A stretch of DNA of 64,000 bases from Chlorokybus atmophyticus (Eukaryota > Plantae > Mesostigma and Chlorokybus algae): NCBI GenBank assembly GCA_009103225.1, contig RHPI01002491.1, forward strand, positions 1 through 64,000. Direction: 5' to 3'. Positions 6,226 through 61,490 of this stretch are shown in pieces. Made by a program: the position numbers and the translations under genes. How positions within the stretch are numbered: position 1 is the first letter of the stretch; every line of letters starts with the position of its first letter. The notes beneath the pieces are model-generated. The model did not search any database, was not told where the DNA came from, and was given only the letters and a program-made list of their open reading frames with translations.

Positions 6226-6893
6226 NNNNNNNNNNNNNNNNNNNNNNNNNNNNNNNNNNNNNNNNNNNNNNNNNNNNNNNNNNNNNNNNNNNNNNNNNNN
6301 NNNNNNNNNNNNNNNNNNNNNNNNNNNNNNNNNNNNNNNNNNNNNNNNNNNNNNNNNNNNNNNNNNNNNNNNNNNNNNNNNNNNNNNNNNNNNNNNNNNN
6401 NNNNNNNNNNNNNNNNNNNNNNNNNNNNNNNNNNNNNNNNNNNNNNNNNNNNNNNNNNNNNNNNNNNNNNNNNNNNNNNNNNNNNNNNNNNNNNNNNNNN
6501 NNNNNNNNNNNNNNNNNNNNNNNNNNNNNNNNNNNNNNNNNNNNNNNNNNNNNNNNNNNNNNNNNNNNNNNNNNNNNNNNNNNNNNNNNNNNNNNNNNNN
6601 NNNNNNNNNNNNNNNNNNNNNNNNNNNNNNNNNNNNNNNNNNNNNNNNNNNNNNNNNNNNNNNNNNNNNNNNNNNNNNNNNNNNNNNNNNNNNNNNNNNN
6701 NNNNNNNNNNNNNNNNNNNNNNNNNNNNNNNNNNNNNNNNNNNNNNNNNNNNNNNNNNNNNNNNNNNNNNNNNNNNNNNNNNNNNNNNNNNNNNNNNNNN
6801 NNNNNNNNNNNNNNNNNNNNNNNNNNNNNNNNNNNNNNNNNNNNNNNNNNNNNNNNNNNNNNNNNNNNNNNNNNNNNNNNNNNNNNNNNNNNN
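6226..6893. other. Assembly gap (run of N)
   Basis: Seen directly; ORF-track entries spanning it are artefacts. Confidence 1.
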
Positions 6894-36995: not shown

Positions 36996-37284
36996 TGTAA
37001 TGTCGGCAGTCACTATAACGGTGGCATCTCACATGCATATAGCAAGCCACACTGAGCAGGTGATAATAAGCAAGACTGAATTAATGGAATAGAAAGGGCC
37101 CGCTTAAATAGGGCACATGTGTGGCGTGTAGCTAGTACAAGCTTATGAGAAACAAAACATGCTATTGGCTAATGCAATATCTACTGTGCATTCTATTGAG
37201 GCGCGTGACCGCGCTGGCTGACCAAGAGCATGTTGATAATGCGGCGCTAATCATGATACTGATAATAAGCATTGCGCCGCTACA
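36996..37284 (-). repeat. Family A 3' LTR (289 bp, TG...CA)
   Basis: On the minus strand it starts TGTAGCGG and ends CATTACA; it matches 42139-42219. Confidence 0.92.
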
Positions 37285-37295
37285 TTACCCTCTCC

Positions 37296-40200: not shown

Positions 40201-41992
40201 CTCTGTAATCAATGCAAAAACGTTTGCCGCCGTCAGGCTTGTCCACGAGGACCACCTGACTGCACCATTCTGAAGAGGATGGTACAATAAAGCCCTCTTC
40301 CAACATATCTTTGACAAGGTCCTCCACCAAAGTGTGTTCCTGCCGTAAGCGCCTGTACTGTCTGATGTGAACAGGCCTCGCCCCCCTCGTATCAATGACA
40401 TGTTGTACATCGTCAGTGGTTTTTGCAGGATTCGGTGCTTCGAACAGTGCTGCATACTCCGACAGCAGAGCTGACACTCCAGTAGGCGAAACTGGCAGCG
40501 ATTGAGGCCGGACACGTATTGGTACGTGCACTGTTGAGAGTGGGACATGAGCAGCGATAGTGGCAGCACACACAGTAGTTGGTGGGGACAGCGCAGTCTC
40601 CGTGCTGTCAGGAAACCTCAGAGAGTGCGCAGACACACTGCAATCTGTCGCCCTTAGCCAGTCAGTGCCGAGGACCACATCAAATAGCTGTGTTAGCAAG
40701 ATGCGGAACCTCCAACGTTGGGTGTATACCTCTCCAATGATGAGGGTAGCAGAGCAGGCAGTAGCAGATTCGGCGGTGATGTGGCCATCACCAAACTGTA
40801 CAGTAATGCGTGGGGCTGACGTGACCGGTAAGCCAAGCTCGACGGCGAGTGTAGAGGACACTGACGAAATAGAGGAACCGGTGTCCAAGAGAACATTCAC
40901 AGGCTTGCCCTCCAACTTGCCAAAAACGGTGCACACGCCTTTGGCTGCTGCTGTCGCAGATGTCACTGCTTGGATTTTAAAATGAGTGATGAGCGGCGTG
41001 TTCTCCTCGCCGGTAGTAAGCATGGCGTTCTGCTGCATGCGGCGGCCTGCCAAGCGACAATCATTGGCATAATGGCCATATTTGTTGCAATTAAAACATC
41101 GTGGTTCCCCCTGTTGATTGAATTTCGGCATGGGACGCTGCTGTGCATGCTGTCGTGACTGGTAGCCATCATGACGTGACTTGCCACGAATGTGGGAGTG
41201 GCGTACGTTGCCGCCACTGTTGGCAACAAATCGGCGTGGCTGTGAGCGGTGAAACTGACTGTGGGGTCTTGGAGCAACTGACTGTGCATTTAAAGTCACT
41301 TTGGGCAACTGACTAGGCTGTAAATCATTAATTGTTGCTTCTACCCTCCTTGCTATTGTAAAAGCTTCCTCCAATGTGTTAGCTTGAGATGTTGCTGCTC
41401 TGTCTCTATAATGTGGCTTGACGGTGGCCCAAAGCAAACCAATTCTGGTCTTTTCTGTCAAACTATCATCTGCAAACACTAGGGTCTCATTAAAGCGCAC
41501 AAAATACTCGGTGACCGTCTCCTGTTCACGTTGCTTCATGGCGAAGATATGTGACCATGCTGAGGCGGATGTAGCTGGTGTTGCCAAAAAGGCAAAAAGT
41601 AATGCATCACGGAGCTTGGACCAGGTGGTTTTAATGTCAATGGGTTGGTTAATGAACCAACCAGCGGCAGTACCAGTTAGTAGAAGGGAGACCTCGCGGC
41701 ACTTGTCGGCGTCGTCCCATCCATGTTACTCGGCGTACTGGCTGACCTCGGCAAGCCAGTGTCGTACTTCCTTGGTGCGATCGCCTGAAAACTTGTCAGG
41801 CCGGGCGCGTCGGTCGCGGCCTGCCTGCTGCTGAGCCGCGGACTGTGCGGCGGTACTGGGGTTTGTCGCCGACAGGTGCTCAAGCCTGTCAACAATGCGG
41901 TCGAGGACGCCCGCCATGGCGGCGGACGCCGAGTCTGCTTCAGGAGGGGTCACGTTGCCTTCGGCGGCTCGGCCGCGTGTGTTATGCGCCAT
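37296..41992 (-). pseudogene. Family A gag-pol, disrupted (in-frame stop near 41726, frameshifts near 39430 and 38280)
   Basis: ORFs 41726..42118, 39440..41587, 39079..39405, 38266..38850 and 37296..38291; integrase HHCC, DDE and GPY module present; no chromodomain seen. Confidence 0.93.
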
Positions 41993-42138
41993 GAAGGTCA
42001 ACGTTGACTGAAAATAAAGATATAATGCCGGAGCCGGTAACAGAAAAAAAAATATAAAATCGGTGACAATATATAACTGAATTGTCGTAAGCAGGGGCGG
42101 TGAGTGGTGAAAAGGCACTCAATCCGCGTCTTCACCAA

Positions 42139-42219
42139 TGTAATGTCGGCACTCACTATAACGGTGGCATCTCACATGCATATAGCAAGCCACACTGAGC
42201 AGGTGATAATAAGCATTGC
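42139..42219 (-). repeat. Family A 5' LTR remnant (about 80 bp)
   Basis: Near-identical to 36996-37075, then jumps to the distal copy of the internal repeat GATAATAAGCATTGC. Confidence 0.9.
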
Positions 42220-43585
42220 AATCATTCAAAGCGACAACGGCAAGGAGTTTGTGAACAGCGAAGTGCAAGACCTGCTAACATGCTACAATGTTGAGAACGT
42301 AAACTCCGCTGCTTACCACCCACAGACCAATGGGTTGGTGGAGAGGATTAATGGAACGGTGAAGCTAGCACTGTACAAAAGCATGGTGGGAGATCGCTGG
42401 GAGCAAAACTTGCAATAGGTGCTGTTCACCTACCGTGTAACAAAGCAACGCAGCACCCGCGTAACGCCATTCAAAATGGTGTATCACAGAGAGCCCAAGC
42501 TTCAGCTCGACAACGTTGTCAACAACGTGGAGGTGGAGGAGCTAGACTATGCAGCAATGGAAGATGCAGACTTGGCTACTCTTCTATTGCTTGATCGCAG
42601 TGAGTCAGTGAGCAAGCTGTATGGTCGTGCCCTCGTGAACATTAAGCACGCTCAGCAAAGGCAAATTGAGGAGTTTGCAAGAAGAAAGCAACCACTTGAC
42701 TTAACACAGATGGAGTGATTGCAGGTGGGGCAGCCTGTGATGCTGAGAACTGGTCCAAAAGCAGCGGGCTCTGCCGGCAATTGGAAGGGAGGTTATGTGA
42801 TTAAAGAAGTATGCAATACGGCGAAAACAACCATCTTGATTGAGCACGTGACTTCTCTGAAGCAGGAGACAGTGAATGTGGAGAGAATTACCCCCTTCAA
42901 AGTGAGGGGTGCAGCTGACGCTGCAAATAGGGCCTGAGTAGGCCCACATGGGCCTTCCGCGGTGCCATAATTCGCAAGCCGCGCGAAGTTATGGTAACCG
43001 TCGGATTGAATCGACGGCCTAGCGAGTCGCGGCTGACAACAGCAGAAAAAGGTCCGATATTCGGCCGAAATGTACAAAAGCAAATGGGAAATAGATGGCT
43101 ACAACCGGCTGACCGGTCAGCGGGCTGAAAAGGCCCAACCTCGTCTTTTGAGGTTGCCAGTGCAGCGGCACTGGTCAGCGGCGGCGGCAGCGGTGGAGCA
43201 ACCACTGGTCAGCCAAGAGCGGCGGCGACGAGTGACGTCGGTGGGGCGTCGCGTCAGCTCGGCCTGTGTGCCATCACCACACAGGCAGGAAGGGGAGGGG
43301 CCTCAGTCGGCAGCGGCGCGCATCACCTGCCGACAGATAGTCTGGGCTGAACTACCAAGCCAGGATGAGCAGTGATGGGTTGGCTGTGATGTGGCTGTGA
43401 TGGCTGAGGGCGTTGTGATGGGACCGGAGACGTGGGGCGTGGCAGTCACAGTGTCGTCGCGTCATCATTAATCCAGTTAGTAATCATAGTCAAGTCAAGC
43501 TTGTGACAAACTGCACAGCTGACTGAGCAGCCAGATAATCATCACACATGCCTTGAAAAGGGCTCATTAAGGACGTTTGTGGAGC

Positions 43586-45391
43586 ATGGCGCCTTCACAA
43601 AAAGGCAACAGTGAGTTCAGGGGGCGCCCAGAGTATCCACAAGGTGTTCCTGCCAGGTTGTACAACACCATACCCCGTCACAAGTCAGCCAACAACGCCC
43701 CTGAGAGATTAACTTGGGTGAATGGCTGGAGGCAAGCTTGTGGGTTGGAACCCTTGTACTCACGCATGCCAGACAATGACGATGGTGTGGAGTACTCACC
43801 CCCACCGTCAAAGGAGCATGCTCCATTCTTCTGGGACGACAAGAAAAAGAAGGTTACACGAGAAGCACTGAAGTTCGCTTATAAACCTGACAGCACCTCT
43901 GCTCAACTGGTACGACCTAATAGTAGCAAAGCAGCTATGAAACGCAAACAAAAGCTACAACAGTTTATGGGATTTGAGTTTATGCACCGGCCTACTGTTG
44001 TTATGGGAGGAATCTTGCTGCATGGTCGTCAGCGGCATTCAGAACCTATGTACACACCACCTGCACGTATTACTGGATTGCACGAAGGCATGCGGCATCA
44101 ACTATTGCCCTCTCAACATGACCAGAGCGATGATGAATCGGAACTTGTGTTGGGTTTGAGCACGACCATTGATGAGATGCTAGCGGAGAGCAGTGAGGAG
44201 CAACAACATTCACTAATTGTAACAAGTTGGGAGAGCTGTGGTTATTTTAAACTCTTAACAGAGCAACAAACCATCAATCAACAACCACTTGCGATTGATG
44301 ATACTGTGGTTTTGGGGCAGATTCCTAGCCAGGAAGCACAGGAGGCCATCCGGAAGCTACCCCAGCCCACACCAAGCTCTCAACCCACTCACTCCGCTTC
44401 ACAAGACGCTGTGGATTATGAGGAGAGCAGCTCTGCTGCCGAGCAGCTTGCTGCCGACACAGCAGGCAGCGTGGACCAGCCGCTGCCTGGGGCGGAAGCT
44501 GCTGAGGAAGTTTGCGCGGAACTTTTTGTGCCCAGGCTGGAAGTTTATGAGGAAGTTTGCAAACATTTCCTGCTGATACGGAAGTTGATTTGGATGATGG
44601 GAGTTTTTGTACCTGTTGCGGAAGTTGCTGCGGAAGTTGCTGCGGAGAAGGCCGGCGAGGGCAAGGAGGAAGATGAGGACGTGGTGGTTGTAGAAGCGCC
44701 GGTGGAAAAACTCCCATCATTTGTTCGGAAGCGTCTCGTGCGCCTCGGCAGTCAGGTCCCAGATGCAACCTTGTCTGCAAAAGCGGAAGTCCCAATTACA
44801 TCCCCATTGGCGATTGTAGCGGTCCCAGAACCGTCTCCGCCTGCACTTGAGTCCCAAAGCGTACCCAAGGAGCAGTCCCAACCCCGCTCGGAGATGGAGA
44901 ACATGTTCAACGCCCTCAAGGGGTACATAGACAAGGCGGTGAAGGCAGGGCTAGCGGCCGTTGCTCAGGATGGACCAAAATCAACACCGGTCGGGACTAC
45001 TGATCCGGCTTGCAAAGATCAGTACCGCAAGACTGAACCCGATCCAACGGATCAACAAACCTACAAAGATCAGGTGGCTTGCAAAGATCGTTCCCGCTCA
45101 CCACTCCGGCGGCGCTCAGTGGATCGCGGTCGCGACCGCTCCCCTCGGGGCAGGTCGCCGCGAGGCAGGCGGTCACCAGTGCGTACCAAGGCAACTCGAG
45201 GCAGGTCGCCGCGGCACTGGTCGCCAGTACGGGCGCGTACGCCACGTCGTTACGGCAAGTCGCCGATGCACGCCCCTGCAAAGGAGGTGGCGGCGCCATC
45301 GACGGCTGTAATGGAGTCAGCACCAACGGTCATGAACAACTTTCCCTGGACGCGGGGACCATTAACCAATATGGCTCCAACCAAGGCGTAA
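43586..45391 (+). CDS. Extra 601-aa ORF of Gypsy B (copy 1) between integrase and PPT; acidic/Pro-rich middle, RS/SP-rich C-terminus
   Basis: Intact long ORF with the same length as copy 2; no family recognised. Confidence 0.75.
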   Translation: MAPSQKGNSEFRGRPEYPQGVPARLYNTIPRHKSANNAPERLTWVNGWRQACGLEPLYSRMPDNDDGVEYSPPPSKEHAPFFWDDKKKKVTREALKFAYKPDSTSAQLVRPNSSKAAMKRKQKLQQFMGFEFMHRPTVVMGGILLHGRQRHSEPMYTPPARITGLHEGMRHQLLPSQHDQSDDESELVLGLSTTIDEMLAESSEEQQHSLIVTSWESCGYFKLLTEQQTINQQPLAIDDTVVLGQIPSQEAQEAIRKLPQPTPSSQPTHSASQDAVDYEESSSAAEQLAADTAGSVDQPLPGAEAAEEVCAELFVPRLEVYEEVCKHFLLIRKLIWMMGVFVPVAEVAAEVAAEKAGEGKEEDEDVVVVEAPVEKLPSFVRKRLVRLGSQVPDATLSAKAEVPITSPLAIVAVPEPSPPALESQSVPKEQSQPRSEMENMFNALKGYIDKAVKAGLAAVAQDGPKSTPVGTTDPACKDQYRKTEPDPTDQQTYKDQVACKDRSRSPLRRRSVDRGRDRSPRGRSPRGRRSPVRTKATRGRSPRHWSPVRARTPRRYGKSPMHAPAKEVAAPSTAVMESAPTVMNNFPWTRGPLTNMAPTKA

Positions 45392-45718
45392 TGACAGCGC
45401 GGGAGGAGGTAACAGGTACTGCAAGGTCAATTGGGCCATTGTGGTGGAGGCCAGGGGCAGGAAGATTGGCATCAACGGCAAGAGCGGCTTCCACCCCATT
45501 ACCATGTAGTTGCCACATGATGAGAAGTATTCGTATTACACAATCCATGTCGCGGCAATGAGGGAGAACCCGGAGGGTATTGTGATCGCTCTGCAGCCAG
45601 GACCAGTGCGGCAACCCCAGCAGCCTGTGACTATGTCATTTCCGACATTTTCTGACTTCATGTGACATAGTAAAACCCAGGTGGGTTTTTATGTTAGTGG
45701 GGAGGGGCTTTTCACAGC

Positions 45719-46334
45719 TGTGGATACCGAACGGGTGCCCGTTGCAAATGGAGTGATCGGGCCGCGTGGCTCAATCACACGACAACAACGAAGCGTCGTG
45801 CGCGGAGCGCGAAGGCCGTCCGATGAAGGGCGGTGATGAAATGCTACATCAACGGCGAATAGGTGTTGATGTAGTTAAATAAATGTTGGTTATTTATTTA
45901 ACCATGTGACGGCATAATAAATCAGTTAGCCACGGGTCTTACTACAGAAAATGACTGTAATTAACTAGAGAGGATGCCCTAGTGTGGCTATACTAGCATG
46001 TAGTAGTTGCATTGTTAACCAGATAGTGGTTGATAAGTTCATTTGTTATTGCATGCATAGCTGGATAAGACCAGTGACAAGGGTATAAAAGCAGTTCTTG
46101 GGCTCAGTCATAAGGTAGCCCGGGAGCCGCCATCACTTCAAGCATCTTACATACAAGAATGTCTTCTGAACTTGACTGAATGATGCATGGCGTGCATGTG
46201 AATGACAAAATGAATGTTGCTCATTGCCTCCCCGGGTGGGCATGAGCGGTGGTTTTTTTGTGCTAACATTTTGCACAGGCAATCCACGAGAGGGCGGTGG
46301 TGACTGCGCCACCACCGGTCACTCGCCGGCTTTT
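45719..46334 (+). repeat. Family B middle (shared) LTR, 616 bp, ending GGCTTTT with no CA
   Basis: Preceded by PPT AGTGGGGAGGGG plus CTTTTCACAGC; TATA-like GTATAAAA near 46083; followed directly by the PBS. Confidence 0.88.
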
Positions 46335-46346
46335 TGGTATCGGAGC
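46335..46346 (+). promoter_or_regulatory. Family B primer-binding site TGGTATCGGAGC (tRNA-iMet type)
   Basis: One mismatch to the plant iMet PBS TGGTATCAGAGC. Confidence 0.85.
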
Positions 46347-47126
46347 CGGTCACTGGGCCAGTTAGGCCGGTAGCAGAAGGTTTCACTGTGCAAAACCGGT
46401 CAGGATTCGGCGGCGGCAATGGTAATTAACGAGCATTTGCAGCGCAATTCAACGAATTGCAAAGAACATTTTAGCGGCTGCTGTGTTGCATTCCAACGAA
46501 CATTTGTGGGCTACAATTTGTGAATTGCAAAAACGCGTTTTTAGGAAGCTACAATTGACGTTACAATCACGTTTTGGAATTGTGCGGGAACTGGCCCGTT
46601 CAGTTTGGAATTAAGAAAGAAAAACCTTAATTCAGATGCCATTAAGTGAGTAAGATTTGCGCGTTGGCGGTCGTTTTTGCTCGCGAGCAAGCGGCGCGGC
46701 GGCGGCAAGTGGCGTGACGGGAAGTGTGACGACGCGTTTTATGTGTGACGTGACGCCGAAGGGTTAGCAGAGTGACGCTGTTCTCCGGCCTACTCACCCT
46801 TGAGAGACCAAGGACTTGGAGGAAAGTACTGCAAAAACAGAAAATACACCAACAACACAAGAAAACAAGCAAATCAAATCCTGTGGGGAGAATTAATTTG
46901 ATAGAATTACTTGCCTCACGCTGAGGTGAAGGGAGTAACTGCAGACTCTGCCAGCAGTGCTCCATAATTTATCAATTAATTCCTTTGGGCCTGCCATAAA
47001 CAAAAAAAGCAAACAACAAAAATTGAAGACCGCCCACTCAACAAATCGGGGCGGCGTGAGAACCCTCAGCTGAGTTTAAGTGAGGGGGTGGGACCAGCAA
47101 CAAGGAAGAAAAAACAGAAGGACACA

Positions 47127-50100
47127 ATGGCGGGGGAAAACACAGCAAGAGTAATGCTGCCATCGCCAAAGCTTACCACCTTTCATGGTCGGCTGAATGA
47201 GGATGTTATAGCATGGCTACAGCATGTAGAGATGATGGCCAAGGTCTATAACTGGGATGAGGAGGTTACGTACAAGTTGGCTGCCACGCATCTGAGGGAT
47301 GAGGCACAAACTTGGTACATGACTCGGCAAGTCAGCACGTGGGACGCATTACAAGTTGATATGAGAGAGCGCTTTGACGTTGGGGACCCCAGTATCTACA
47401 TGAATGAGTTGCATGTAAAGACACAAGGGCCCAACGAGAGCGTGCGCACTTATGATGACCATCTGGAGAAGCTCATGGACCGTTTAGGAGGAGAGTTTTC
47501 AAAGCCTTGGAAGAAAACGCGCTTTATACAGGGCTTGAGGCTAGATTTACGTGAGAAGGTCATAAACAGAAGGCCTGAGGAGTTGGAACAAGCCATAAAT
47601 GATGCAGTATACTTTGAAGGCATTATGCAGGCCGCGCAGGTTGGCAAAGATCAAGCTGCGACAAAAGAGTCATCCGCTATGGCAGAGTTGCAAAAGAAAA
47701 TGGGTGCCATGATGAAGCAGATGGCTGAACAAACGGTGCATCTGGCAAGAGTGGTAACTCACGCGCAGCAACCCGGGAGGTAGCAACAAGCTCTCGCAGA
47801 CAAAGGGGGAGTCAGACCTGACACCCGATCTTGCTATTATTGTCACAAGGCGGGCCACATCAAGCCTTATTGTCCGCAATGGGCAGCAGACACGGCCAAA
47901 GACACACAGCTAACAATGGCAACACCAGGCAATGTGGTTGGGTAAAGCTCAAAAGTGTCGATGGTGGTGGCAATGAGTGACAACGATGATGAGATAGGGG
48001 CAGTTAGCACAGTGTCTGAGCCTGTAGGGCTACCTGCCACTACCGCTGCGCACCTGACGCCGACCTCGAGTACAAGGGTTTAGCAACAGCGTACAGGACC
48101 TAACGAGGTGACAGCTGTGTGGACAAAGCCTGCAGTGAAGGTGCACACTACACCACAAGTGGCAAAAGGGGAGAACTATGATGTGCTTGAGCAGTTGGAC
48201 TACGTTACTGCCAAGATCTCCATCAAACAGCTGCTGAAAGTAAGTCCTCAACACAGGCAGCAGATGGCAGCATACCTCAAAAGGCTTGAGGGAAGTGATA
48301 CGCACGTGGTGCAAATGACAGAGGGTGTGGAGCATACCGCGATGTACGCCACCGTTAGCATTTTGGGCCGAGAGGTAGAGGCGGTAATTGACACGGGGGC
48401 ATCGTGCACAGTGATGGGCATAACCCTGGTTGGGGAATTGGGGCTGCGCGGAATGATGCAAGCCACAAGAAGGATTATAAGGGTGGCCAACGGTGACAAG
48501 TGTGCCTTTTTGGGAGTGCTCGAGGAGCTCCCCATCACTATTGGAGGGGTTACGGAAGTTGTGCGCGTGAACGTTAGCCCCTCCACAATGGACGACTTGC
48601 TGATTGGCACGGATTGGTTAACTCAGAGTGGAGCAACCCTATCGTTTGCAGAGAAGCGCATGACCTTTCCGAAAGGGATAGACGCAGATGGCGCATTATT
48701 GTCCTTCACCTCAGCTGACAATCATGTCTTGAGGACAGCACAGCCTCAGAAGGTTATGACCGTGCAAGAGCTCCCCATCAACACAGCGTTGCCTGATTCC
48801 GAACGAGAGCAGGTGGCGGCGTGGCTCAGCAAGTATGATGACCTGTTTGCTACCAAGCCCGAGTTTATACTTGGTGACAAAGTGCCAGGCACAAACGTAG
48901 TCACGCATGTCATTGACACTGGAGATGCACGGCCCATTGTGCAAAAAGCATACCGCACATCACGTGCTGAAGATCAGCAGATTGAGGAAGAGGTTGTGCA
49001 CATGCTAAAGGCTGGCATTGTGAGTCCCTCGTCAAGCCCGTGGTCTTCGCCAATTGTGATGGTGCCGAAACCGAATGGTTGAGGTTGGCGGCTTTGCATT
49101 GATTACCGCAAACTCAATGAGGTCACAAAGAAAGACAGATTCCCCGTGCCCCGATGTGACGACATTTTTGATAATGTGGGCAAGGCCAAGTACTTCAGCA
49201 AGTTGGACTTACTGGCAGCCTAACATCAGGTGTGGGTCGAGCCGCGTGATCGCGAGAAGACAGCGATTGTGACCAAGACAGGCCCGTACGAGTTCAACAC
49301 CATGCCTTTTGGCTTGACCAACGCACCAGCCACCTTTCAAAGGCTAATGACGCAGATGTTGAAGAAGCACATTGAGAAGTTTGTACTGGTGTTCTTTGAT
49401 GACATCATGGTGTACTCTAGTACCTTTCAGGAGCACATGCAGCACCTGGACTTGATCATGCAAGCTTTGCGCGAAGCGCAGCTAGTGGCGGCGATGGAAA
49501 GTGCAAGTTCGCCATGTTTGAGGTTGACATGCTCGGACATGATCTGATGGAGAATGGTGTAAAGCCACAAGCCAGCAAAATCAAGGCAGTGCAAGAGTTC
49601 CCGGTTCCAACCACACAAACACGCGTACGCCCCTTCCTAGGGTTGGCCTCATACTACAGGCGGTTTGTGGAGAATTTCTTACAGAAGGCACAGCCGCTCA
49701 CCGAATTGACATCAAGTGCAGTGTCCTTTGTGTGGGGAGCAACTCAGCAGCAAGCTTTTGATGAGCTGAAGAATGCGTTGACGACAGCTCCAGTGCTAAG
49801 CAGGCCAGACCTGGACTTGCCATTTGTGGTGATGACGGATGCTTCAGACTATGCCTTAGGAGCTATATTGTCACAACGTATGGACAACAAGGAGCATGTT
49901 GTTGCTTATGCAAGCCGGATGCTCAACAAGACAGAGCGAAACTACAGTGTGACGGAGATAGAGTGCCTCGCCATTGTGTGGAGTGTGGAGATGTGGAGGC
50001 ACTACTTACATGGCACAACCTTTACAGTTGTGACGGACCATCGTCCGCTAAAGTGGCTGATGACCACAGCTGACCCTACGGGTAAGCTCACCCGGTGGTC

Positions 50101-52073
50101 CCTCAAGTTGCAGGAGTATGACTTTGAGGTTGAGTATTAGCCTGGGAAGAACCACGATCATGTGGATGCTCTGAGTCGCAACCCCCCGGACTTGTACACG
50201 GCCGAGGAGGAAGTTGTGCAGGTCGGTGAGTTGGCTGAGGCCGCCCCTGAGGATAACGTCATGCAACCATATCCTACAGAGGAGGTAATGCCTGAGTTGG
50301 AGCCTGTAGATCTTGGTGAACAGACGGGAGAGTTGGCTGAACCTGCCCTGGAGGATGAAACCATTCAGACTAACATTCGAGGAGAAGTGATGCCTGAATT
50401 GATGCAGATGGTGAACCTGCCAGACACAGCTCATTGGAATACAACCATACACCCCGAATCTGAGGGGGAGGTGGTGCAGGAGTTGATCGCAGTAACGGCG
50501 GCGCCGGAAGCAGCAGGCGCTCAAGCAAGTATTACACCTGTGTGGCAATATGTGCCAGTCGTTGACGGTGCCAATGAAGTCTGTGAGCCATGCACTGCAA
50601 TAGGCCACGCAGCACCTGTGGCGGACATAATGACAGACGCATATTTGGCTCAGGAGAGCCAAGATGTTGAAGGGGAGGACACAGTTGAGGCTTTAGCAGC
50701 AGTGCAAGCCTTACCCCCACAAAAATCGTTTTCATCTAAGCCAATTGAGGATGTGATGGATGATAAGAGGTTATTGACCTTCTTGAAAGACTCTTCCAGC
50801 ATCACTGCGCTGCCAAAAAAGGAAAGACGACGAGTGCGCAAACGAGCAAAGGCGTATGTGATGAAGGGCAGCGAGGTCTGGACAAGACCTGTGAGACAAA
50901 GCAAGCGGAAGCACAAGGATGATGATGAGCAATGGCAAGCGGTGAGTCGCAGAGTTCCATCCAAGAACTTGAGGCAAGGGCTCATTGTAATGCATCACGA
51001 CAAGATGCACCACCCAAGTGCCGGCAAAGTGCTTGAGATGTTGCGCCCTCGATTCTTTTGGTCGAGAATGACCGAGGAGGTGACAGAGTTTGTAAACTCT
51101 TGCCAGAGCTGCCAAGAGCACCGTCGTACATTGCGTGAGCCTGCCCCGCTGCACCCTATCAAGGTGACCAGTGAAGCCTTTCACAGAGTGGGGATTGATC
51201 TGATCGGGCCTCTGCCAGCGACTGCGAAGGGCAACAAGTACATTGTCATGGCCATTGATTACCTCACCAAGTGGGTGGAGGCAAAGGCTATTCCATCAAA
51301 AAAAGGCACACATATTCGCCAGTTCATACTTGAGGACATTATCTGTCGTCATAGTGTGCCTGCAATCATTCAAAGCGACAACGGAGTTTGTGAACAGCGA
51401 AGTGCAAGACCTGCTGTCATGCTACAATGTTGAGAACGTAAACTCCGCTGCTTACCACCCACAGACCAATGGGTTGGTGGAGAGGATTAATGGAACGGTG
51501 AAGCTAGCACTGTACAATGGGTTGGTGGGAGATCGCTGGGAGCAAAACTTGCAACAGGTGCTGTTCATCTACCGTGTAACAAAGCAACGCAGCCCCCGCG
51601 TAGCGCCATTCAAAATGGTGTATCACAGAGAGCCCAAGCTTCAGCTCGACAACGTTGTCAACAACGTGGAGGTGGAGGAGCTAGACTATGCAGCAATGGA
51701 AGATGCAGACTTGGCTACTCTATTGCTTGATCGCAGCGAGTCAGTGAGCAAGCTGTATGGTCGTGCCCTCGTGAACATTGAGCACGCTCAGCAAAGGCAA
51801 ATTGAGGAGTTTGCAAGAAGAAAGCAACCACTTGACCTAACACAGATGGAGTGGTTGCAGGTGGGGCAGCCTGTGATGCTGAGAACTGGTCCAAAAGCAG
51901 CGGGCTCTGCCGGCAATTGGAAGGGAGGTTATGTGATTAAAGAAGTATGCAATACGGCGAAAACAACCATCTTGATTGAGCACGTGACTTCTCTGAAGCA
52001 GGAGACAGTGAATGTGGAGAGAATTACCCCCTTCAAAGTGAGGGGTGCAGCTGACGCTGCAAATAGGGCCTGA
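47127..52073 (+). pseudogene. Family B gag-pol with several nonsense mutations and frameshifts
   Basis: Gag LPSPKLTTFHG..; CYYCHKAGHIKPYC lies after the TAG at 47781; protease is in the same frame; RT, RNase H and integrase pieces in ORFs 48108-52073; 5-nt deletion near 51385. Confidence 0.93.
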
Positions 52074-52716
52074 GTAGGCCCACATGGGCCTTCCGCGGTG
52101 CCATAATTCGCAAGCCGCGCGAAGTTATGGTAACCGTCGGATTGAATCGACGGCCTAGCGAGTCGCGGCTGACAACAGCAGAAAAAGGTCCGATACTCGG
52201 CCGAAATGTACAAAAGCAAATGGGAAATAGATGGCTACAACCGGCTGACCGGTCAGCGGGCTGAAAAGGCCCAACCTCGTCTTTTGAGGTTGCCAGTGCA
52301 GCGGCACTGGTCAGCGGCGGCGGCAGCGGAGGAGCAGCCACTGGTCAGCCAAGAGCGGCGGCGACGAGTGACGTCGGTGGGGCGTTGCGTCAGCTCGGCC
52401 TGTGTGCCATCACCACACAGGCAGGAAGGGGAGGGGCCTCAGTCGGCAGCGGCGCGCATCACCTGCCGACAGATAGTTCGGGCTGAACTACCAAGCCAGG
52501 ATGAGCAGTGATGGGTTGGCTGTGATGTGGCTGTGATGGCTGAGGGCGTTGTGATGGGACCGGAGACGTGGGGCGTGGCAGCCACAGTGTCGTTGCGTCA
52601 TCATTAATCCAGTTAGTAATCATAGTCAAGCTTGTGACAAAGTGCACAGCTGACTGAGCAGCCAGATAATCATCACACATGCCTTGAAAAGGGCTCATTA
52701 AGGACGTTTTTGCAGC

Positions 52717-54522
52717 ATGGCGCCTTCACAAAAAGGCAACAGAGAGTTCAGGGGGCGCCCAGAGTATCCACAAGGTGTTCCTGCCAGGTTGTACAACACC
52801 ATACCCCGTCAAAAGTCAGCCAACAACGCCCCTGAGAGATTAACTTGGGTGAATGGCTGGAGGCAAGCTTGTGGGTTGGAACCCTTGTACTCACGCATGA
52901 CAGACAATGACGATGGTGTGGAGTACTCACCCCCACCGTCAAAGGAGCATGCTCCATTCTTCTGGGACGACAAGAAAAAGAAGGTTACACGAGAAGCACT
53001 GAAGTTCGCTTATAAACCTAACAGCACCTCTGCTCAACTGGTACGACCTAATAGTAGCAAAGCAGCTATGAAACGCAAACAAAAGCTACAACAGTTTATG
53101 GGATTTGAGTTTATGCACCGGCCTACTGTTGTTATGGGAGGAATCTTGCTGCATGGTCGTCAGCGGCATTCAGAACCTATGTACACACCACCTGCACGTA
53201 TTACTGGATTGCACGAAGGCATGCGGCATCAACTATTGCCCTCTCAACATGACCAGAGCGATGATGAATCGGAACTTGTGTTGGGTTTGAGCACGACCAT
53301 TGATGAGATGCTAGCGGAGAGCAGTGAGGAGCAACAACATTCACTAATTGTAACAAGTTGGGAGAGCTGTGGTCATTTTAAACTCTTAACAGAGCAACAA
53401 ACCATCAATCAACAACCACTTGCGATTGATGATACTGTGGTTTTGGGGCAGATTCCTAGCCAGGAAGCACAGGAGGCCATCCGGAAGCTACCCCAGCCCA
53501 CACCAAGCTCTCAACCCACTCACTCCGCTTCACAAGACGCTGTGGATTATGAGGAGAGCAGCTCTGCTGCCGAGCAGCTTGCTGCCGACACAGCAGGCAG
53601 CGTGGACCAGCCGCTGCCTGGGGCGGAAGCTGCTGAGGAAGTTTGCGCGGAACTTCTTGTGCCCAGGCTAGAAGTTTATGAGGAAGTTTGCAAACATTTC
53701 CTGCTAATACGGAAGTTGATTTGGATGATGGGAGTTTTTGTACCTGTTGCGGAAGTTGCTGCGGAAGTTGCTGCGGAGAAGGCCGGCGAGGGCAAGGAGG
53801 AAAATGAGGACGTGGTGGTTGTAGAAGCGCCGGTGGAAAAACTCCCATCATTTGTTCGGAAGCGTCTCGTGCGCCTCGGCAGTCAGGTCCCAGATGCAAC
53901 CTTGTCTGCAAAAGCGGAAGTCCCAATTACATCCCCATTGGCGATTGTAGCGGTCCCAGAACCGTCTCCGCCTGCACTTGAGTCCCAAAGCGTACCCAAG
54001 GAGCAGTCCCAACCCCGCTCGGAGATGGAGAACATGTTCAACGCCCTCAAGGGGTACATAGACAAGGCGGTGAAGGCAGGGCTAGCGGCCGTTGCTCAGG
54101 ATGGACCAAAATCAACACCGGTCGGGACTACTGATCCGGCTTGCAAAGATCAGTACCGCAAGACTGAACCCGATCCAACGGATCAACGAACCTACAAAGA
54201 TCAGGTGGCTTGCAAAGATCGTTCCCGCTCACCACTCCGGCGGCGCTCAGTGGATCGCGGTCGCGACCGCTCCCCTCGGGGCAGGTCGCCGCGAGGCAGG
54301 CGGTCACCAGTGCGTACCAAGGCAACTCGAGGCAGGTCGCCGCGGCACTGGTCGCCAGTACGGGCGCGTACGCCACGTCGTTACGGCAAGTCGCCGATGC
54401 ACGCCCCTGCAAAGGAGGTGGCGGCGCCATCGACGGCTGTAATGGAGTCAGCACCAACGGTCATGAACAACTTTCCCTGGACGCGGGGACCATTAACCAA
54501 TATGGCTCCAACCAAGGCGTAA
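52717..54522 (+). CDS. Extra 601-aa ORF of Gypsy B (copy 2)
   Basis: Intact and near-identical to 43586..45391. Confidence 0.75.
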   Translation: MAPSQKGNREFRGRPEYPQGVPARLYNTIPRQKSANNAPERLTWVNGWRQACGLEPLYSRMTDNDDGVEYSPPPSKEHAPFFWDDKKKKVTREALKFAYKPNSTSAQLVRPNSSKAAMKRKQKLQQFMGFEFMHRPTVVMGGILLHGRQRHSEPMYTPPARITGLHEGMRHQLLPSQHDQSDDESELVLGLSTTIDEMLAESSEEQQHSLIVTSWESCGHFKLLTEQQTINQQPLAIDDTVVLGQIPSQEAQEAIRKLPQPTPSSQPTHSASQDAVDYEESSSAAEQLAADTAGSVDQPLPGAEAAEEVCAELLVPRLEVYEEVCKHFLLIRKLIWMMGVFVPVAEVAAEVAAEKAGEGKEENEDVVVVEAPVEKLPSFVRKRLVRLGSQVPDATLSAKAEVPITSPLAIVAVPEPSPPALESQSVPKEQSQPRSEMENMFNALKGYIDKAVKAGLAAVAQDGPKSTPVGTTDPACKDQYRKTEPDPTDQRTYKDQVACKDRSRSPLRRRSVDRGRDRSPRGRSPRGRRSPVRTKATRGRSPRHWSPVRARTPRRYGKSPMHAPAKEVAAPSTAVMESAPTVMNNFPWTRGPLTNMAPTKA

Positions 54523-54851
54523 TGACAGCGCGGGAGGAGGTAACAGGTACTGCAAGGTCAATTGGGGCCCATTGTGGTGGAGGCCAGGGGCAGGAAGATT
54601 GGCATCAACGGCAAGAGCGGCTTCCACCCCATTACCATGCAGTTGCCACATGATGAGAAGTATTCGTATTACACAATCCATGTCGCGGCAATGAGGGAGA
54701 ACCCGGAGGGTATTGTGATCGCTCTGCAGCCAGGACCAGTGCGGCAACCCCAGCAGCCTGTGACTATGTCATTTCCGACATTTCCTGACTTCATGTGACA
54801 TAGTAAAACCCAGGTGGGTTTTTATGTTAGTGGGGAGGGGCTTTTCACAGC

Positions 54852-55471
54852 TGTGGATACCGAACGGGTGCCCGTTGCAAATGGAGTGATCGGGCCGCGT
54901 GGCCCAATCACACGACAACAACGAAGCGTCGTGCGCGGGGCGCGAAGGCCGTCCGATGAAGGGCGGTGATGAAATGCTACATCAACGGCGGATAGGTGTT
55001 GATGTAGTTAAATAAATGTTGGTTATTTATTTAACCATGTGACGGCATAATAAATCAGTTAGCCACGGGTCTTACTACAGAAAATGACTGTAATTAACTA
55101 GGGAGGATGCCCTGGTGTGGCTATACTAGCATGTAGTAGTTGCATTGTTAACCAGATAGTGGTTGATAAGTTCATTTGTTATTGCATGCACAGCTGGATA
55201 AGACCAGTAACAAGGGTATAAAAGCAGTTCTTGGGCTCAGTCATAAGGTAGCCCGGGAGCCGCCATCACTTCAAGCATCTTACATACAAAAATGTCTTCT
55301 GAACTTGACTGAATGATGCATGGCGTGCATGTGAATGACAAAATGAATGTTGCTCATTGCCTCCCCGGGTGGGCATGAGCGGTGGTTTTTTTGTGCTAAC
55401 ATTTTGCACAGGCAATCCACGAGAGGGCGGTGGTGACTGCGCCACCACCGGTCACTCGCCGGCTTTTCACA
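54852..55471 (+). repeat. Family B 3' LTR, 620 bp, TGTG...CACA
   Basis: Same as the middle LTR plus 4 terminal bases (CACA); PPT at 54829-54840. Confidence 0.88.
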
Positions 55472-56014
55472 TGTGGCGGTCAGATATCGACGGCCAGTCA
55501 AGATATAGCCTTTCCCGGTTACACCCTTAGTTAGAAGGGCCTGTAGTTAGGTCTGTTAAGACCCATTTCCTGGTTACAACCTCTTTTTGTATTGGTTAGC
55601 CGTTGGATTTATTGACTATGTTGTGGTTGACACTGGTTAGTGTGTAGGTACCGCGCGCATTCTCAGTTAGCGTCGGTACCTTAGCCAGATAAGACCAGAG
55701 CTGGGCTAGTATATAAACACAGTCAGTGGTCATTGTTAGCTAGCCAAGCGAAGGTCAAAGACTGCAGTCAATCGTCCAAGTTATAAAGACCTTTAAAGAC
55801 CTTGAGAATGATGTTTCAAGTGTGCTTGGTTCAAGTGTAAAAGTGAAGAGTATGAAGTGTTTGTTTGTGACTAACTTGACAGGGGCCAAGTTTAATAAAG
55901 TGACCAAGGTAGTGTCGCGCGCGACACAAGTCAAGTTAAAGAAAGGCGACGGCGATTAAGTCACCGTCGCAAGTAACTGCCCACCGGCGGACCTAGCACG
56001 CCGGCGGACTCGAC
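55472..56014 (+). repeat. Family C 5' LTR (TGTGGCGG...GGACTCGAC, no terminal CA)
   Basis: TATA-like TATATAAA near 55710; followed by C and then the PBS. Confidence 0.88.
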
Positions 56015-56426
56015 CTGGTAATCGGAGCTTCTTCAAGATATTAAAGCCTTCAAGACCGAAGTCGGCAAGAAGGCGATACGCGGCGATCCAAGATCAATTT
56101 TGTTCGAGGGGGTGAAAGAGACGCTTTTGATAAAGAATAAAGAAGGGTGAATTGTTGGTAGAACAATTTACTGAAGGTACAAGGAAGTCAAGGGAGCAGG
56201 CGAGAGTGAAGCTTGTTCAAAGGCTACAAGTACCAAGATCTTAATCAAAAAATACTCCCGAGAAAAAGAGGAAAAGGACAAGAACAATCAAAAAAATCAA
56301 GAAAAATCAAGAAAAATCAAGATTATTCAAGAAAACAATACCAAAAAGGAAGAATCAAAAGTTGCCATCACGGCAGGTCATACAAGACAATCAGACTTGC
56401 GAGCAGCAGTAGAAACTTTGCTCAAC

Positions 56427-59400: not shown

Positions 59401-60550
59401 TGCAACCATCACAATTGACGGCCCCACCAACAGCAATGAGCAGCCTCAGGAGAGTCTGAATGTTGGGCGGGAGAAAGATGAGGCAAGCACACATGAAGAC
59501 ATCACTGATTAAGGCAGTAACCTTGCAGAGGAAGAAACAAGCTCAGAAGATAGCTACCCCACATACAAGGAAGAAGTTTTAGCACAATTGGAGCCTCAGC
59601 AAGAGATAACGTGTGAAAACTGCAGTAAAAAGCACTCAACCAAAGGGTGCACTGCATTATACATACATGAAGATAAGGAGGCAATGACCTACCTGACAGA
59701 AGGGGAGGACTCATTAGCTGGCTTTACTCAAAACCAGCGAAGACGTGTTCGCCGACGAGTGGTTACACTTTACTCCATCAATGGGGAGGTGTGGAAAAGA
59801 GGAGATACACCTCAATTAGACCGCAAGATCCCAACACAAGATGAGCGACAAGCATTACCTACACAGATGCACGACCAGTTTAGTCACATTGGAGTTAACC
59901 GCATGTATGAAGTTCTTAAGAAAGACTACTTCTGGGCACGCATGAAGGAAGAAGTACGCCAATATGTTGCCTCATGCAAGCTGTGCCAAGAAAACAAGCA
60001 AGTACGCAGAGTGCCGGCTCCATTGAAGTCCATTGTGGTGGAAAGTGAGCCATTCTTCAGAGTAGGCATTGACCTGGTTGGTCCCTTACAACCAAAGTCA
60101 CACAGGCTGGCAATGAATACATGGTGGTTGCCATTGACTACCTGACCAAGTGGATGGAGGCAAGAGGTGTGCCAAACAAACAGGCAATTCACATCTTCAA
60201 GTTCCTGCAAGAAGATATCATTGCCAGACACGGAGCCCCATTCATTTGGCAAAGTGACAATGGGGGAGAATTCATCAATGTGGCATTGCAAGCAGCATTG
60301 GACCAGGCAAACATTGTGCACTACAAGTCAGCAGGCTATCATCCTCAAACTAATTGGTTGGTAGAGCGCATGAATGGCATCATCAAGCGGGCAATCCTCA
60401 AGTACAACCAGCAAAAAGCTTGTTTGTGGGACACATATCTGCCTCACACACTGATGGCTTATCGCACCACAAAGCAGAAAAGCACGCAACACTCTCCATT
60501 CCAGCTGCTTTGTGGTCGAGAGCCAAGGTTGTTGACTCAAGTGTTGAGAC
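56427..60550 (+). pseudogene. Family C gag-pol, heavily disrupted and 3'-truncated in integrase
   Basis: LPSPKLSTFSG Gag; IVNSGAA protease; FLDDVI RT; RNase H; IN HHCC/DDE up to GREPRLLTQVLR. Confidence 0.9.
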
Positions 60551-61074
60551 GCTCCGATACCACGTCGAGTCCGCCGGCGTGCTAGGTCCGCCGGTGGGCA
60601 GTTACTTGCGACGGTGACTTGATCGCCGTCGCCTTTCTTTAACTTGACTTGTGTCGCGCGCGACACTACCTTGGTCACTTACAAACTTGGCCCCTAACAA
60701 GTTAGTCACAAACAAACACTTCATACTCTTCACTTTCACACTTGAAGCAAGCACACTTGAAACATCATTCTCACGATTGACTGCAGTCTTTGACCTTCGC
60801 TTGGCTAGCGAATGACCACTGACTGTGTTTATATACTAGCCCAGCTCTGGTCTTAACTGGCTAAGGTATCGACGCTAACTGAGAATGCGCGCGGTACTTA
60901 CACATTAACCAGTGTCAACCACAACATAGTCAATAAAATCCAACGGCTAACCAATACAAAAAGAGGTTATAACCAGGAAATGGGTCTTAACAGACCTAAC
61001 TACAGGCCCTTCTAACTAAGGGTGTAACCGGGAAAGGCTATATCTTGACTGGCCGTCGATATCTGACCGCCACA
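60551..61074 (-). repeat. Inverted family C PBS (60551-60562) plus 5'-type LTR (60564-61074)
   Basis: Reverse complement of 55472-56028 with about a dozen substitutions and a few indels, including one of 28 nt. Confidence 0.93.
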
Positions 61075-61490
61075 CGTTGACCAGCAGCGGGTGCGGTAGT
61101 CCCAGCAGCGTCCTGAGCGCGGTCCGGAAGATGTCGGCGGAAATACGAAGTGCCGGTAGCCACGCGCCAGCACCGATAGCACCGATAGCCACGCGCCAGC
61201 ACCGACACCGGAAGCCGATTGGCGCCGCGCTCTGTCGGTGGTAGCCGCGGTGGCATTGAGTCGGCCGACCAACGCGGCGTTGACGGTGACTGAGATGTCC
61301 TCCTGCAGCTTCCGCGCTTTTACGCGCGCCAACGCCGATAAGGGCGGAAGTGTGGGGCGCGCCGATGGTGGCAGCAGCTGCGTGGCAGCTCTCAAATCGC
61401 GTTGAAAAGGCAAAACGCCGACGTCGGCGTTGTCGATGGCGTCGACGAAAGGCCGTGATGGAGGGGCGGTGAAACGGCGGCGCAGTTGGC
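61075..61490 (-). mobile_element. Upstream fragment of the CRE-like non-LTR element (post-RT region), 5'-truncated
   Basis: ARRQSASGVGAGAWL...FRTALRTLLGLP motif; a 29-nt internal duplication (61157-61205) causes a frameshift; same strand as 36592-36995. Confidence 0.75.

What the first reader, a model, noticed from the sequence alone, without database searches (positions are those of the whole stretch)
45696..55471. Gypsy B: CA-less 5' LTR and a pre-formed att junction (CACA-GC-TGTG) behind the PPT, suggesting a new way of building the right-hand integration end
SEEN: the LTR copy followed by the PBS ends CGCCGGCTTTT|TGGTATCGGAGC (46324-46346), with no CA. The 3' LTR ends CGCCGGCTTTTCACA (to 55471), so it is 4 nt longer (620 vs 616 bp). 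In both copies the PPT runs into GGCTTTTCACAGCTGTGGATACC (45706-45728; 54839-54861). The 11-mer that ends the element is therefore also written just upstream of the LTR start, inside the perfect palindrome CACAGCTGTG. KNOWN: in canonical LTR elements the right att end (CA) comes from U5 next to the PBS and the PPT abuts the TG. Family A in this window follows that rule. INFERENCE: linear cDNA would begin (GG)CTTTTCACAGC.. and end ..GGCTTTT. An extra strand transfer or circularisation through this 5-7 nt terminal redundancy would create CACA^GC^TGTG, and integrase would open it by removing GC. The element would thus encode both att sites at its 3' end and probably integrate through a circle-junction intermediate, loosely analogous to DIRS junction templating but with a DDE integrase. 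I know of no description of this arrangement, but I could not search the literature.
Basis: partly seen in the sequence, partly recalled or inferred. Interest (0 to 1): 0.92.

Follow-up and report, generated by a model that had tools for sequence, protein, structure and literature searches.

The report
Gypsy element with offset integration ends
A dead, tandemly doubled Ty3/gypsy jumping gene in an alga lacks the usual CA end signal next to its primer site and carries it behind the polypurine tract instead. This suggests, without proving it, that its integrase cuts a small palindrome formed by joining the two ends of the DNA copy.

Summary
The "5' LTR" (45719-46334) is the shared middle LTR of a tandem dimer. 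A unit truncated in integrase (42217-45718) lies upstream of it, so no true left end and no target-site duplication can be read. The right end (…GGCTTTTCACA, 55471) abuts the first base of a family C LTR directly. The element is Ty3/gypsy (gag-PR-RT-RNH-DDE integrase) and is broken by frameshifts.

The core anomaly holds. U5 meets the PBS as GGCTTTT|TGGTATCGGAGC with no CA. The right terminus carries CACA. The terminal 11-mer recurs only behind the PPT, inside CACAGCTGTG, 11 nt before TGTGG.

A private 4-nt deletion is unlikely: there are 4 indels in 4118 aligned nt, and both family C LTR/PBS borders also lack CA.

My best reading (about 0.5) is a miniature split-direct-repeat gypsy (A…B-A-B, with B = 11 nt). 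Its right end would be copied across a 5-7 nt terminal redundancy and cut at CACA^GC^TGTG.

No other copies could be fetched, so the mechanism is inferred. A DIRS-like repeat layout on a gypsy was noted in print in 2018 for KnitGypsy-Dnmt3. This scan also flagged many such DNMT-gypsy copies on other DNA of this genome.

The parts
42217..45695 (+). Left unit of family B, 5'-truncated. It holds the integrase C-terminal part and the 606-codon ORFx (43571-45388). It is colinear with 51361-54828.
   Evidence: 98.5% identity, 4 indels
45696..45707 (+). Polypurine tract AGTGGGGAGGGG of the left unit.
45708..45718 (+). 11-nt spacer 'B1' (CTTTTCACAGC) between the PPT and TGTGG. Together with GG of the PPT it repeats the 11 terminal nt of the element. 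The palindrome CACAGCTGTG is at 45713-45722.
45719..46334 (+). Middle LTR ('A', 616 nt) shared by the two units. It starts TGTGGATACC and ends CGCCGGCTTTT without CA. A TATAAAA motif stands near 46085.
46335..46346 (+). 12-nt PBS (TGGTATCGGAGC), initiator-tRNA-Met type, directly abutting U5.
46347..54828 (+). Internal region of the complete unit: gag, protease, RT, RNase H, H2C2 zinc finger plus DDE integrase, then ORFx (52702-54519). It is broken by frameshifts and stops.
54829..54840 (+). Polypurine tract of the right unit.
54841..54851 (+). Spacer 'B1' (CTTTTCACAGC) of the right unit. The palindrome is at 54846-54855.
54852..55467 (+). Right LTR ('A2', 616 nt). It differs from the middle LTR by 8 substitutions, all transitions, and no indel.
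55468..55471 (+). CACA ('B2'): 4 nt beyond the U5/PBS-defined LTR end. It completes the inverted terminal TGTG...CACA and the 11-mer GGCTTTTCACA.
55472..56016 (+). Family C LTR, starting TGTGGCGG directly after B's CACA. Its border with the PBS reads GGACTCGAC-C-TGGTAATCGGAGC, with no CA.
60547..61077 (-). Inverted second family C LTR with a 12-nt PBS. Its border reads GGACTCGAC-G-TGGTATCGGAGC, with no CA. Its outer flank is different (…GTCAACG), which fixes the LTR start at TGTGG.
36996..42215 (-). Family A gypsy element with 77-nt LTRs (TG…CA), here for contrast. Its LTR/PBS border is canonical (…ACATTACA-T-TGGTGAAGACG). It ends the left B unit.

Best explanation
Family B is a Ty3/gypsy retrotransposon with a DDE integrase. 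Its reverse-transcription landmarks and its integration ends are out of register by 11 nt.

Layout:
- The LTR defined by PPT and PBS would run from CTTTTCACAGC-TGTGG… to …GGCTTTT.
- The integrated ends are TGTGG… and …GGCTTTTCACA.
- This is the split-direct-repeat layout (A1 - body - B1-A2-B2) in miniature. A is the 616-nt LTR, B1 is CTTTTCACAGC, and B2 is the overlapping (CTTTT)CACA.

Shown here:
- The layout itself.
- The CA-less U5/PBS border in B and in sister family C.
- The 11-mer repeat and the palindrome.
- The tandem dimer.

Inferred:
1. The full-length DNA copy starts (GG)CTTTTCACAGCTGTGG… and ends …GGCTTTT, so it has a 5-7 nt terminal redundancy.
2. The growing plus strand, or the annealed ends, crosses this redundancy from the right end to the left end. 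This resembles the circularising template switch through the short 'r' repeats of hepadnaviruses.
3. That step adds CACAGC… to the right end and creates a second CACA^GC^TGTG site.
4. Integrase nicks after each CA. This leaves CA-3'OH ends with 2-nt 5' overhangs and yields an insertion that starts TGTGG and ends CACA.

The copy in the window is a later product. Two such units joined through one LTR, most simply by unequal LTR-LTR crossing-over. The dimer then decayed and lost its left part.
For: - Gypsy identity and DDE integrase.
- Border sequences.
- The 11-mer GGCTTTTCACA occurs only at the right terminus and behind the two PPTs. The palindrome occurs only there.
- The PPT is separated from TGTGG by 11 pyrimidine-rich nt.
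- TGTG/CACA form the only terminal inverted repeat, and it exists only if CACA belongs to the element.
- Both family C LTR/PBS borders also lack CA within 9 nt of TGG. These copies are 91% alike and about 50% identical to B in protein. Family A in the same window has CA-T-TGG.
- A private deletion is unlikely. There are 4 indel events in 4118 aligned nt and none in the LTR. One of exactly these 4 nt is of order 1e-4 a priori.
- B's CACA is joined base-for-base to the independently defined first base of the C LTR. This is expected if both are true DNA termini.
- Precedents: a DIRS-like repeat layout on KnitGypsy-Dnmt3 (PMC5890265); integrases that cut palindromic LTR-LTR junctions (PMC1180852; PMC1905944, listed).
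- Scan notes report many split-repeat gypsy copies with an internal palindromic site in this genome. These are leads, not independent evidence.
Against: - There is only one CA-less B border and one B right terminus, both in a dead, rearranged copy.
- B2 is only 4 nt, a 1/256 match by chance.
- No left terminus, no TSD and no host flank can be read.
- Family C's PPT region is absent, so the key prediction for the sister family is untested.
- No reads or other copies cover the junctions.
- A circle or extended intermediate would carry two identical palindromic sites. The model does not explain why only the one giving A…B-A-B would be used.
- The scaffold has a gap, so the assembly is not finished quality.
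Confidence: 0.5

Rival explanations
1. Canonical element with a private lesion. Family B normally has LTRs TGTGG…GGCTTTTCACA with the PBS directly behind CACA. The middle LTR of this decayed dimer simply lost CACA. The U5-like 11-mer behind the PPT would be a fossil, for example the remnant of an old LTR-LTR junction, with no role.
For: The copy is old and broken. The two units differ by 45 substitutions and 4 indels of 2-5 nt, so small deletions do occur. Canonical architecture has by far the higher prior. No second B copy was available.
Against: The deletion would have to remove exactly the 4 terminal nt, which is of order 1e-4 from the indel density. The PPT-proximal 11-mer and the 11-nt gap between PPT and TGTGG stay unexplained. 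Family C lacks CA at two further borders.
Confidence: 0.2
2. Same offset architecture, different route. The plus-strand primer ends after …GGGGAGGGGCTTTT, so the linear DNA runs from CACAGCTGTGG… to …GGCTTTT. Host end-joining makes an ordinary 2-LTR circle, and integrase reopens it at the palindrome. No extra strand transfer is needed.
For: Blunt joining of those ends gives exactly GGCTTTT-CACAGC-TGTGG. 2-LTR circles and their cleavage by integrase are documented (PMC1180852; PMC1905944 and PMC4372172, listed).
Against: This route does not need the 7-nt identity between the U5 end and the bases after the purine run, so that identity becomes a 4^-7 coincidence. A PPT primer ending in CUUUU would be unusual. 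The circle would hold two equivalent cut sites.
Confidence: 0.15
3. CACA is not part of B. The B LTR ends non-canonically at GGCTTTT. The 4 nt before the family C LTR are leftover target DNA or a TSD from two adjacent insertions, and they match the PPT-proximal CACA by chance.
For: Gypsy TSDs are 4-5 bp (general knowledge of the family, not tested here). The 4 nt lie exactly between two elements. This is only one observation.
Against: It needs two insertions within 4 nt of each other plus a 1/256 sequence match. That match also happens to complete the TGTG/CACA inverted termini. B would then have no CA at its right end at all.
Confidence: 0.1
4. Assembly artefact. The tandem arrangement, or one of the junctions, is a mis-join of different genomic copies in a gapped scaffold.
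For: There is an N gap at 6226-6893. A 9.1-kb repeat at 98.5% identity is hard to assemble. Public contigs did not cover the junctions.
Against: The two units differ at 45 sites and 4 indels, so they are not a duplicated contig. Each critical junction fits inside one sequencing read, and the two sides share no sequence that could cause a false overlap.
Confidence: 0.05

Closest known systems
KnitGypsy-Dnmt3 of Klebsormidium nitens (de Mendoza et al. 2018, PMC5890265)
   Same: It has Ty3/gypsy domain composition with a DDE integrase, but a repeat layout 'the same as that of a DIRS retrotransposon' (A - coding - B-A-B). Scan notes say that family is abundant in this genome and has an internal palindromic site (unchecked).
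   Different: Family B has no DNA methyltransferase and is shorter (9.1-kb unit). Its B segment is only 11 nt, so it looks like an ordinary LTR pair. I could not obtain a KnitGypsy-Dnmt3 sequence to test relatedness. The paper gives no mechanism.
PAT / Ngaro / TOC1-type DIRS-order elements with split direct repeats
   Same: The topology is A1 - body - B1-A2-B2, with an internal B-A junction that matches the joined ends. This implies an end-to-end (circular or junction-templated) intermediate (general knowledge; Fig. 1e legend of PMC5890265).
   Different: Those elements encode a tyrosine recombinase and no DDE integrase. B has H2C2 plus rve integrase domains and no recombinase hit, and it has a tRNA PBS and a PPT.
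Integrase cleavage of the palindromic LTR-LTR junction of 2-LTR circles (PFV, HIV-1)
   Same: A retroviral-type integrase specifically cuts a palindrome formed by the joined U5 and U3 ends and yields 3'-processed ends (PMC1180852; PMC1905944, listed). CACA^GC^TGTG has the same form.
   Different: In retroviruses the CA of the right end is encoded in U5 next to the PBS, and the junction exists only in the circle. Here the junction is written into the element behind the PPT, and U5 has no CA.
Hepadnavirus circularisation through the short terminal redundancy 'r'
   Same: A third template switch of the growing plus strand, from the 5' end to the 3' end of the minus strand, is guided by a 7-9 nt terminal repeat. 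The 5-7 nt GGCTTTT/CTTTT redundancy predicted here would play the same role.
   Different: Hepadnaviruses have no LTRs and no integrase, and they keep the circle as their genome.
Tandem LTR-retrotransposon arrays (LTR-I-LTR-I-LTR), e.g. Cassandra arrays (PMC7215508)
   Same: Two internal regions are separated by a single shared LTR. PMC7215508 was only listed in a search and not read.
   Different: Such arrays are a secondary rearrangement. They do not explain the CA-less border or the PPT-proximal repeat.

Membership tests
Ty3/gypsy (Metaviridae) LTR retrotransposon | gag - protease - RT - RNase H - DDE integrase, in that order | tested here: met
   Pfam hits Retrotrans_gag/Ty3_capsid, gag-asp_proteas, RVT_1, RT_RNaseH, Integrase_H2C2 and rve, in order along 47088-52073.
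Ty3/gypsy (Metaviridae) LTR retrotransposon | Direct long terminal repeats with TG…CA ends | tested here: inconclusive
   Two 616-nt LTR copies differ by 8 substitutions (1.3%). TGTG…CACA holds only for the right copy. The left-hand copy is a shared middle LTR, and no terminal 5' LTR exists here.
Ty3/gypsy (Metaviridae) LTR retrotransposon | U5 ends in CA within a few nt of the tRNA PBS | tested here: not met
   The border reads GGCTTTT|TGGTATCGGAGC. It is also not met at the two family C borders, but it is met in family A.
Ty3/gypsy (Metaviridae) LTR retrotransposon | PPT directly abuts the TG of the 3' LTR | tested here: not met
   11 nt (CTTTTCACAGC) lie between GGGGAGGGG and TGTGG in both units.
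Ty3/gypsy (Metaviridae) LTR retrotransposon | 4-5 bp target-site duplication | not testable with these tools
   The left end is lost at 42217, and the right end abuts a family C LTR.
Split-direct-repeat gypsy (KnitGypsy-Dnmt3 type) | A1 - body - B1-A2-B2 repeat layout | tested here: inconclusive
   B1-A2-B2 is present in miniature: B1 is 11 nt, and B2 is CACA plus a 5-7 nt overlap. An A1 not preceded by B at a true left end cannot be seen.
Split-direct-repeat gypsy (KnitGypsy-Dnmt3 type) | DNMT3 domain inside pol | tested here: not met
   No methyltransferase hit in any ORF. ORFx is low-complexity with no Pfam, homologue or Atlas hit.
DIRS order (DIRS1 / PAT / Ngaro) | Tyrosine recombinase instead of DDE integrase | tested here: not met
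   Integrase_H2C2 and rve hits are present and there is no Phage_integrase hit.

The most novel reading that the evidence does not exclude
A lineage of DDE-integrase Ty3/gypsy elements (families B and C here, perhaps together with the DNMT-carrying family of the same genome) does not encode its right att site in U5. Instead, an obligatory third template switch across a 5-7 nt terminal redundancy copies it from a template behind the PPT. This makes a palindromic end-to-end junction (CACA^GC^TGTG) that the integrase must cut. Integration from a junction or circle intermediate would then be the normal pathway of an LTR retrotransposon.
Probability: 0.3. Interest if true: 0.85.

Novelty: new variant of a known kind. 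Interest (0 to 1): 0.6.

Why it matters
In the textbook scheme for LTR elements and retroviruses, both integration ends are fixed by where the tRNA primer and the PPT primer sit. If family B really lacks the U5 CA and takes it from a template behind the PPT, then a DDE integrase is working on an internal, palindromic end-to-end junction as its normal substrate. That idea was proposed for retroviruses in the 1980s, later demoted to a side reaction, and is otherwise associated with tyrosine-recombinase (DIRS-type) elements.

The 11-nt version seen here gives base-level resolution of the presumed cut site and of the homology that would guide the extra strand transfer. This makes the hypothesis directly testable with oligonucleotides and recombinant integrase.

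There is also a practical point for annotation. LTR finders that demand TG…CA and a PBS within a few nt of CA will mis-bound or miss such families.

Tried and rejected
Attempts to obtain other copies all failed:
- Protein search with ORFx and with gag found no homologue at all.
- Exact-protein look-ups for ORFx and gag found nothing on record.
- The sequencing-run search returned only three runs of one sample, kept as contigs with a word share of 0.11 or less.
- Laying those runs gave two short pieces inside the LTR (45850-46056) and nothing on either junction.
- A metagenome scan for the 20-mer at the LTR end gave four hits, all unrelated to the LTR.
- An exhaustive HMMER search with the 423-aa RNase H/integrase ORF gave best hits of only 30-50% identity, from pseudoscorpion, Rhizophagus and Tanacetum. 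One fetched locus was an unrelated fused gene model. The lineage is thus not represented in the libraries.

Other dead ends:
- A host MTR4-like exon did not identify the organism.
- No tRNA gene and no Rfam match were found in the window.
- One-mismatch copies of the 11-mer at 17424, 18558 and 23256 were rejected as related junctions. The two I read (17424 and 23256) have no PPT or LTR context; 18558 was not read.
- PBS (GGTATC) pairing with the LTR start (GATACC) was rejected as meaningful. It is only 6-7 bp and is not conserved in family C.
- C's LTR does not include the preceding CACA. The inverted C copy has a different flank, with 3 of 10 matches.
- ORFx is not a selected gene. The two copies differ by 10 nonsynonymous and 2 synonymous codons.
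- The supplements of PMC5890265 hold no element sequences.

Full report
**1. What is in the sequence**

- The PPT AGTGGGGAGGGG (45696-45707 and 54829-54840) is followed by an 11-nt pyrimidine-rich spacer, CTTTTCACAGC.
- Then comes the LTR, which starts TGTGGATACC (45719 and 54852).
- The first LTR copy ends …CGCCGGCTTTT at 46334 and runs straight into a 12-nt initiator-tRNA-type PBS, TGGTATCGGAGC (46335-46346).
- The second copy ends …CGCCGGCTTTTCACA at 55471.
- The 11-mer GGCTTTTCACA has exactly three perfect copies in the 64-kb window: the right terminus and the two PPT-proximal sites.
- The 10-nt palindrome CACAGCTGTG has exactly two copies, at those PPT-proximal sites.

**2.

The repeat does not begin at the PPT.
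- 42217-46334 is colinear with 51361-55467 at 98.5% identity. There are 45 substitutions and 4 indels over 4118 nt.
- The locus is therefore a tandem dimer: [integrase C-terminal part - ORFx - PPT] - LTR - [PBS - gag - pol - ORFx - PPT] - LTR.
- The "CA-less 5' LTR" is the shared middle LTR.
- The left unit stops at 42217, against the LTR of a family A gypsy element on the other strand (36996-42215, 77-nt LTRs). The two flanks of A do not match, so A is not a simple insertion.

As a result, no true left terminus and no target-site duplication of B exist in the window.

On the right there is no host DNA either. CACA (55468-55471) is followed directly by the first base of a family C LTR, TGTGGCGG…. 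The start of that LTR is fixed independently by a second, inverted C LTR (60547-61077) with a different flank.

**3. What the element is**

Pfam shows Ty3/gypsy domains in the right order: gag, aspartic protease, RT, RNase H, H2C2 zinc finger and rve integrase. No tyrosine recombinase and no methyltransferase were found.

gag-pol is split over three frames, so the copy is dead.

A 606-codon downstream ORF (ORFx) is open in both units. It is low-complexity and RS-rich, has no homologue, and shows 10 nonsynonymous against 2 synonymous differences between the units.

Family C is about 50% identical to B in gag, RT and RNase H. Family A is about 40-47% identical in RT and RNase H and about 30% in protease.

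**4. Is the missing CACA a private deletion?**

The two units show about one indel per kb and none inside the LTR.

Two further points weigh more:
- Both family C LTR/PBS borders (GGACTCGAC-C-TGGTAATCGGAGC and GGACTCGAC-G-TGGTATCGGAGC) also have no CA within 9 nt of the PBS. Family A has the canonical …CA-T-TGG.
- A deletion would leave two things unexplained: the 11-mer behind the PPT, and the 11-nt gap between the PPT and TGTGG.

I therefore think the CA-less U5/PBS border is a real property of this lineage (about 0.65-0.7).

**5. Is CACA part of B?**

Arguments for:
- It completes the only terminal inverted repeat (TGTG…CACA).
- It extends the U5-end/PPT-spacer identity from 7 to 11 nt.
- It is joined base-for-base to the independently defined terminus of C, as if two DNA ends had been joined or one element had landed exactly at the other's end.

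Argument against: this is one observation of 4 nt, a 1/256 match by chance.

**6. How it most likely works (inferred)**

1. With the PBS and PPT where they are, canonical reverse transcription gives a linear DNA that starts (GG)CTTTTCACAGC-TGTGG… and ends …GGCTTTT. This DNA has no CA at the right end, 11 extra nt at the left end, and a 5-7 nt direct terminal redundancy.
2. The redundancy is just what is needed for one more homology-guided switch of the plus strand from the right end to the left end. Annealing of the two ends would do the same. This resembles the circularisation step of hepadnaviruses through their short 'r' repeats (own knowledge).
3. The switch would write CACAGC… behind U5 and create a second CACA^GC^TGTG site.
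4. Nicking after each CA gives CA-3'OH ends with 2-nt 5' overhangs, the normal strand-transfer substrate. The insertion then runs from TGTGG… to …CACA.

Integrase cleavage of palindromic LTR-LTR junctions has been shown in vitro and in infected cells for PFV, and in vitro for HIV-1 (PMC1180852; PMC1905944, listed).

A variant without the extra switch is possible: the PPT primer would end after CTTTT and host end-joining would make a 2-LTR circle. That variant leaves the 7-nt identity unexplained.

Neither route explains why only one of the two identical palindromes would be used.

The tandem dimer itself is most simply a later unequal LTR-LTR exchange. It has the junctions expected for two A…B-A-B units (PPT-B1-A-PBS in the middle, A-B2 at the right).

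**7. Comparison with what is known**

The layout is the split-direct-repeat topology of PAT/Ngaro/TOC1-type DIRS elements, but with a DDE integrase, a tRNA PBS and a PPT.

That combination has been mentioned once in print. The Fig. 4c legend of de Mendoza et al. 2018 says KnitGypsy-Dnmt3 has the repeat structure of a DIRS element and the domains of a gypsy element (PMC5890265). No mechanism is given there.

Notes of this scan report many 11-kb DNMT-carrying gypsy copies with A…B-A-B repeats and an internal palindromic site on other pieces of this genome. I could not check them, and I use them only as a lead.

What family B adds:
- The offset also occurs in a family without DNMT.
- The offset can be as small as 11 nt, so the element passes for an ordinary LTR pair.
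- It is visible at base resolution, including the short redundancy.

I file it as a new variant of a known kind.

**8. What could not be done**

Every route to further copies failed:
- No homologues of gag or ORFx.
- No informative reads.
- Only random metagenome hits.
- Only distant integrase relatives, at most 50% identity.

The scaffold carries an N gap, so long-read confirmation of the arrangement is also desirable.

**9. Verdict**

- Confidence in the offset architecture with a junction-derived right end is about 0.5.
- Confidence in the specific third-switch mechanism is about 0.3.
- Interest: 0.6.

Noticed in passing
window 55468-55476: The right terminus of family B (…CACA) is joined base-for-base to the left terminus of a family C LTR (TGTGGCGG…). 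This is a heterologous LTR-LTR junction without the GC of B's internal palindrome. It could reflect end-joining of two DNA copies or highly targeted insertion.
   Followed up: partly
window 55472-61077: The family C body is enclosed by inverted LTRs. The right LTR plus exactly 12 nt of PBS (60551-60562, minus strand) is fused to the integrase region. It looks like a plus-strand strong-stop DNA attached in the wrong orientation.
   Followed up: partly
window 36996-42215: Family A gypsy element (minus strand) with very short 77-nt LTRs. The LTR/PBS border is canonical, no purine-rich tract is obvious before the 3' LTR, and the two flanks do not match (no TSD). This suggests recombination between two A copies that removed the left part of B.
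   Followed up: partly
window 42217-46334 versus 51361-55467: 36 of the 45 substitutions between the two B units are transitions, including all 8 in the LTR. This would be consistent with decay driven by cytosine methylation.
   Followed up: no
window 43571-45388 and 52702-54519: A 606-codon ORF downstream of integrase is open in both units. It is low-complexity, has an RS-rich tail and one hydrophobic stretch near residue 340, and has no Pfam, homologue or Atlas hit. The two copies differ by 10 nonsynonymous and 2 synonymous codons, so there is no sign of constraint.
   Followed up: partly
window 46296-46354: Just before the U5/PBS border there is a stem-loop (GGTGGTG…CACCACC, 46296-46316). 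A 9-nt direct repeat, CCGGTCACT, brackets the border (46315-46323 and 46346-46354).
   Followed up: no
window 6226-6893: A run of N marks an assembly gap, so the scaffold is not finished sequence.
   Followed up: yes
window 27735-28424 (-) and 34602-35315 (+): Host-gene exons: a DEAD_2 (XPD/RTEL-type) helicase piece and an MTR4/SKI2-type helicase piece (MTR4 beta-barrel and DSHCT domains). The closest database proteins of the latter are only 35-40% identical over most of the query.
   Followed up: partly
window 45850-46056: One public run (X1, organism A, 2019) holds two short contigs inside the B LTR. One is identical and one has 8 mismatches and 2 gaps over 84 nt and then runs on into unlike sequence. 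At least one diverged LTR copy therefore exists elsewhere.
   Followed up: no
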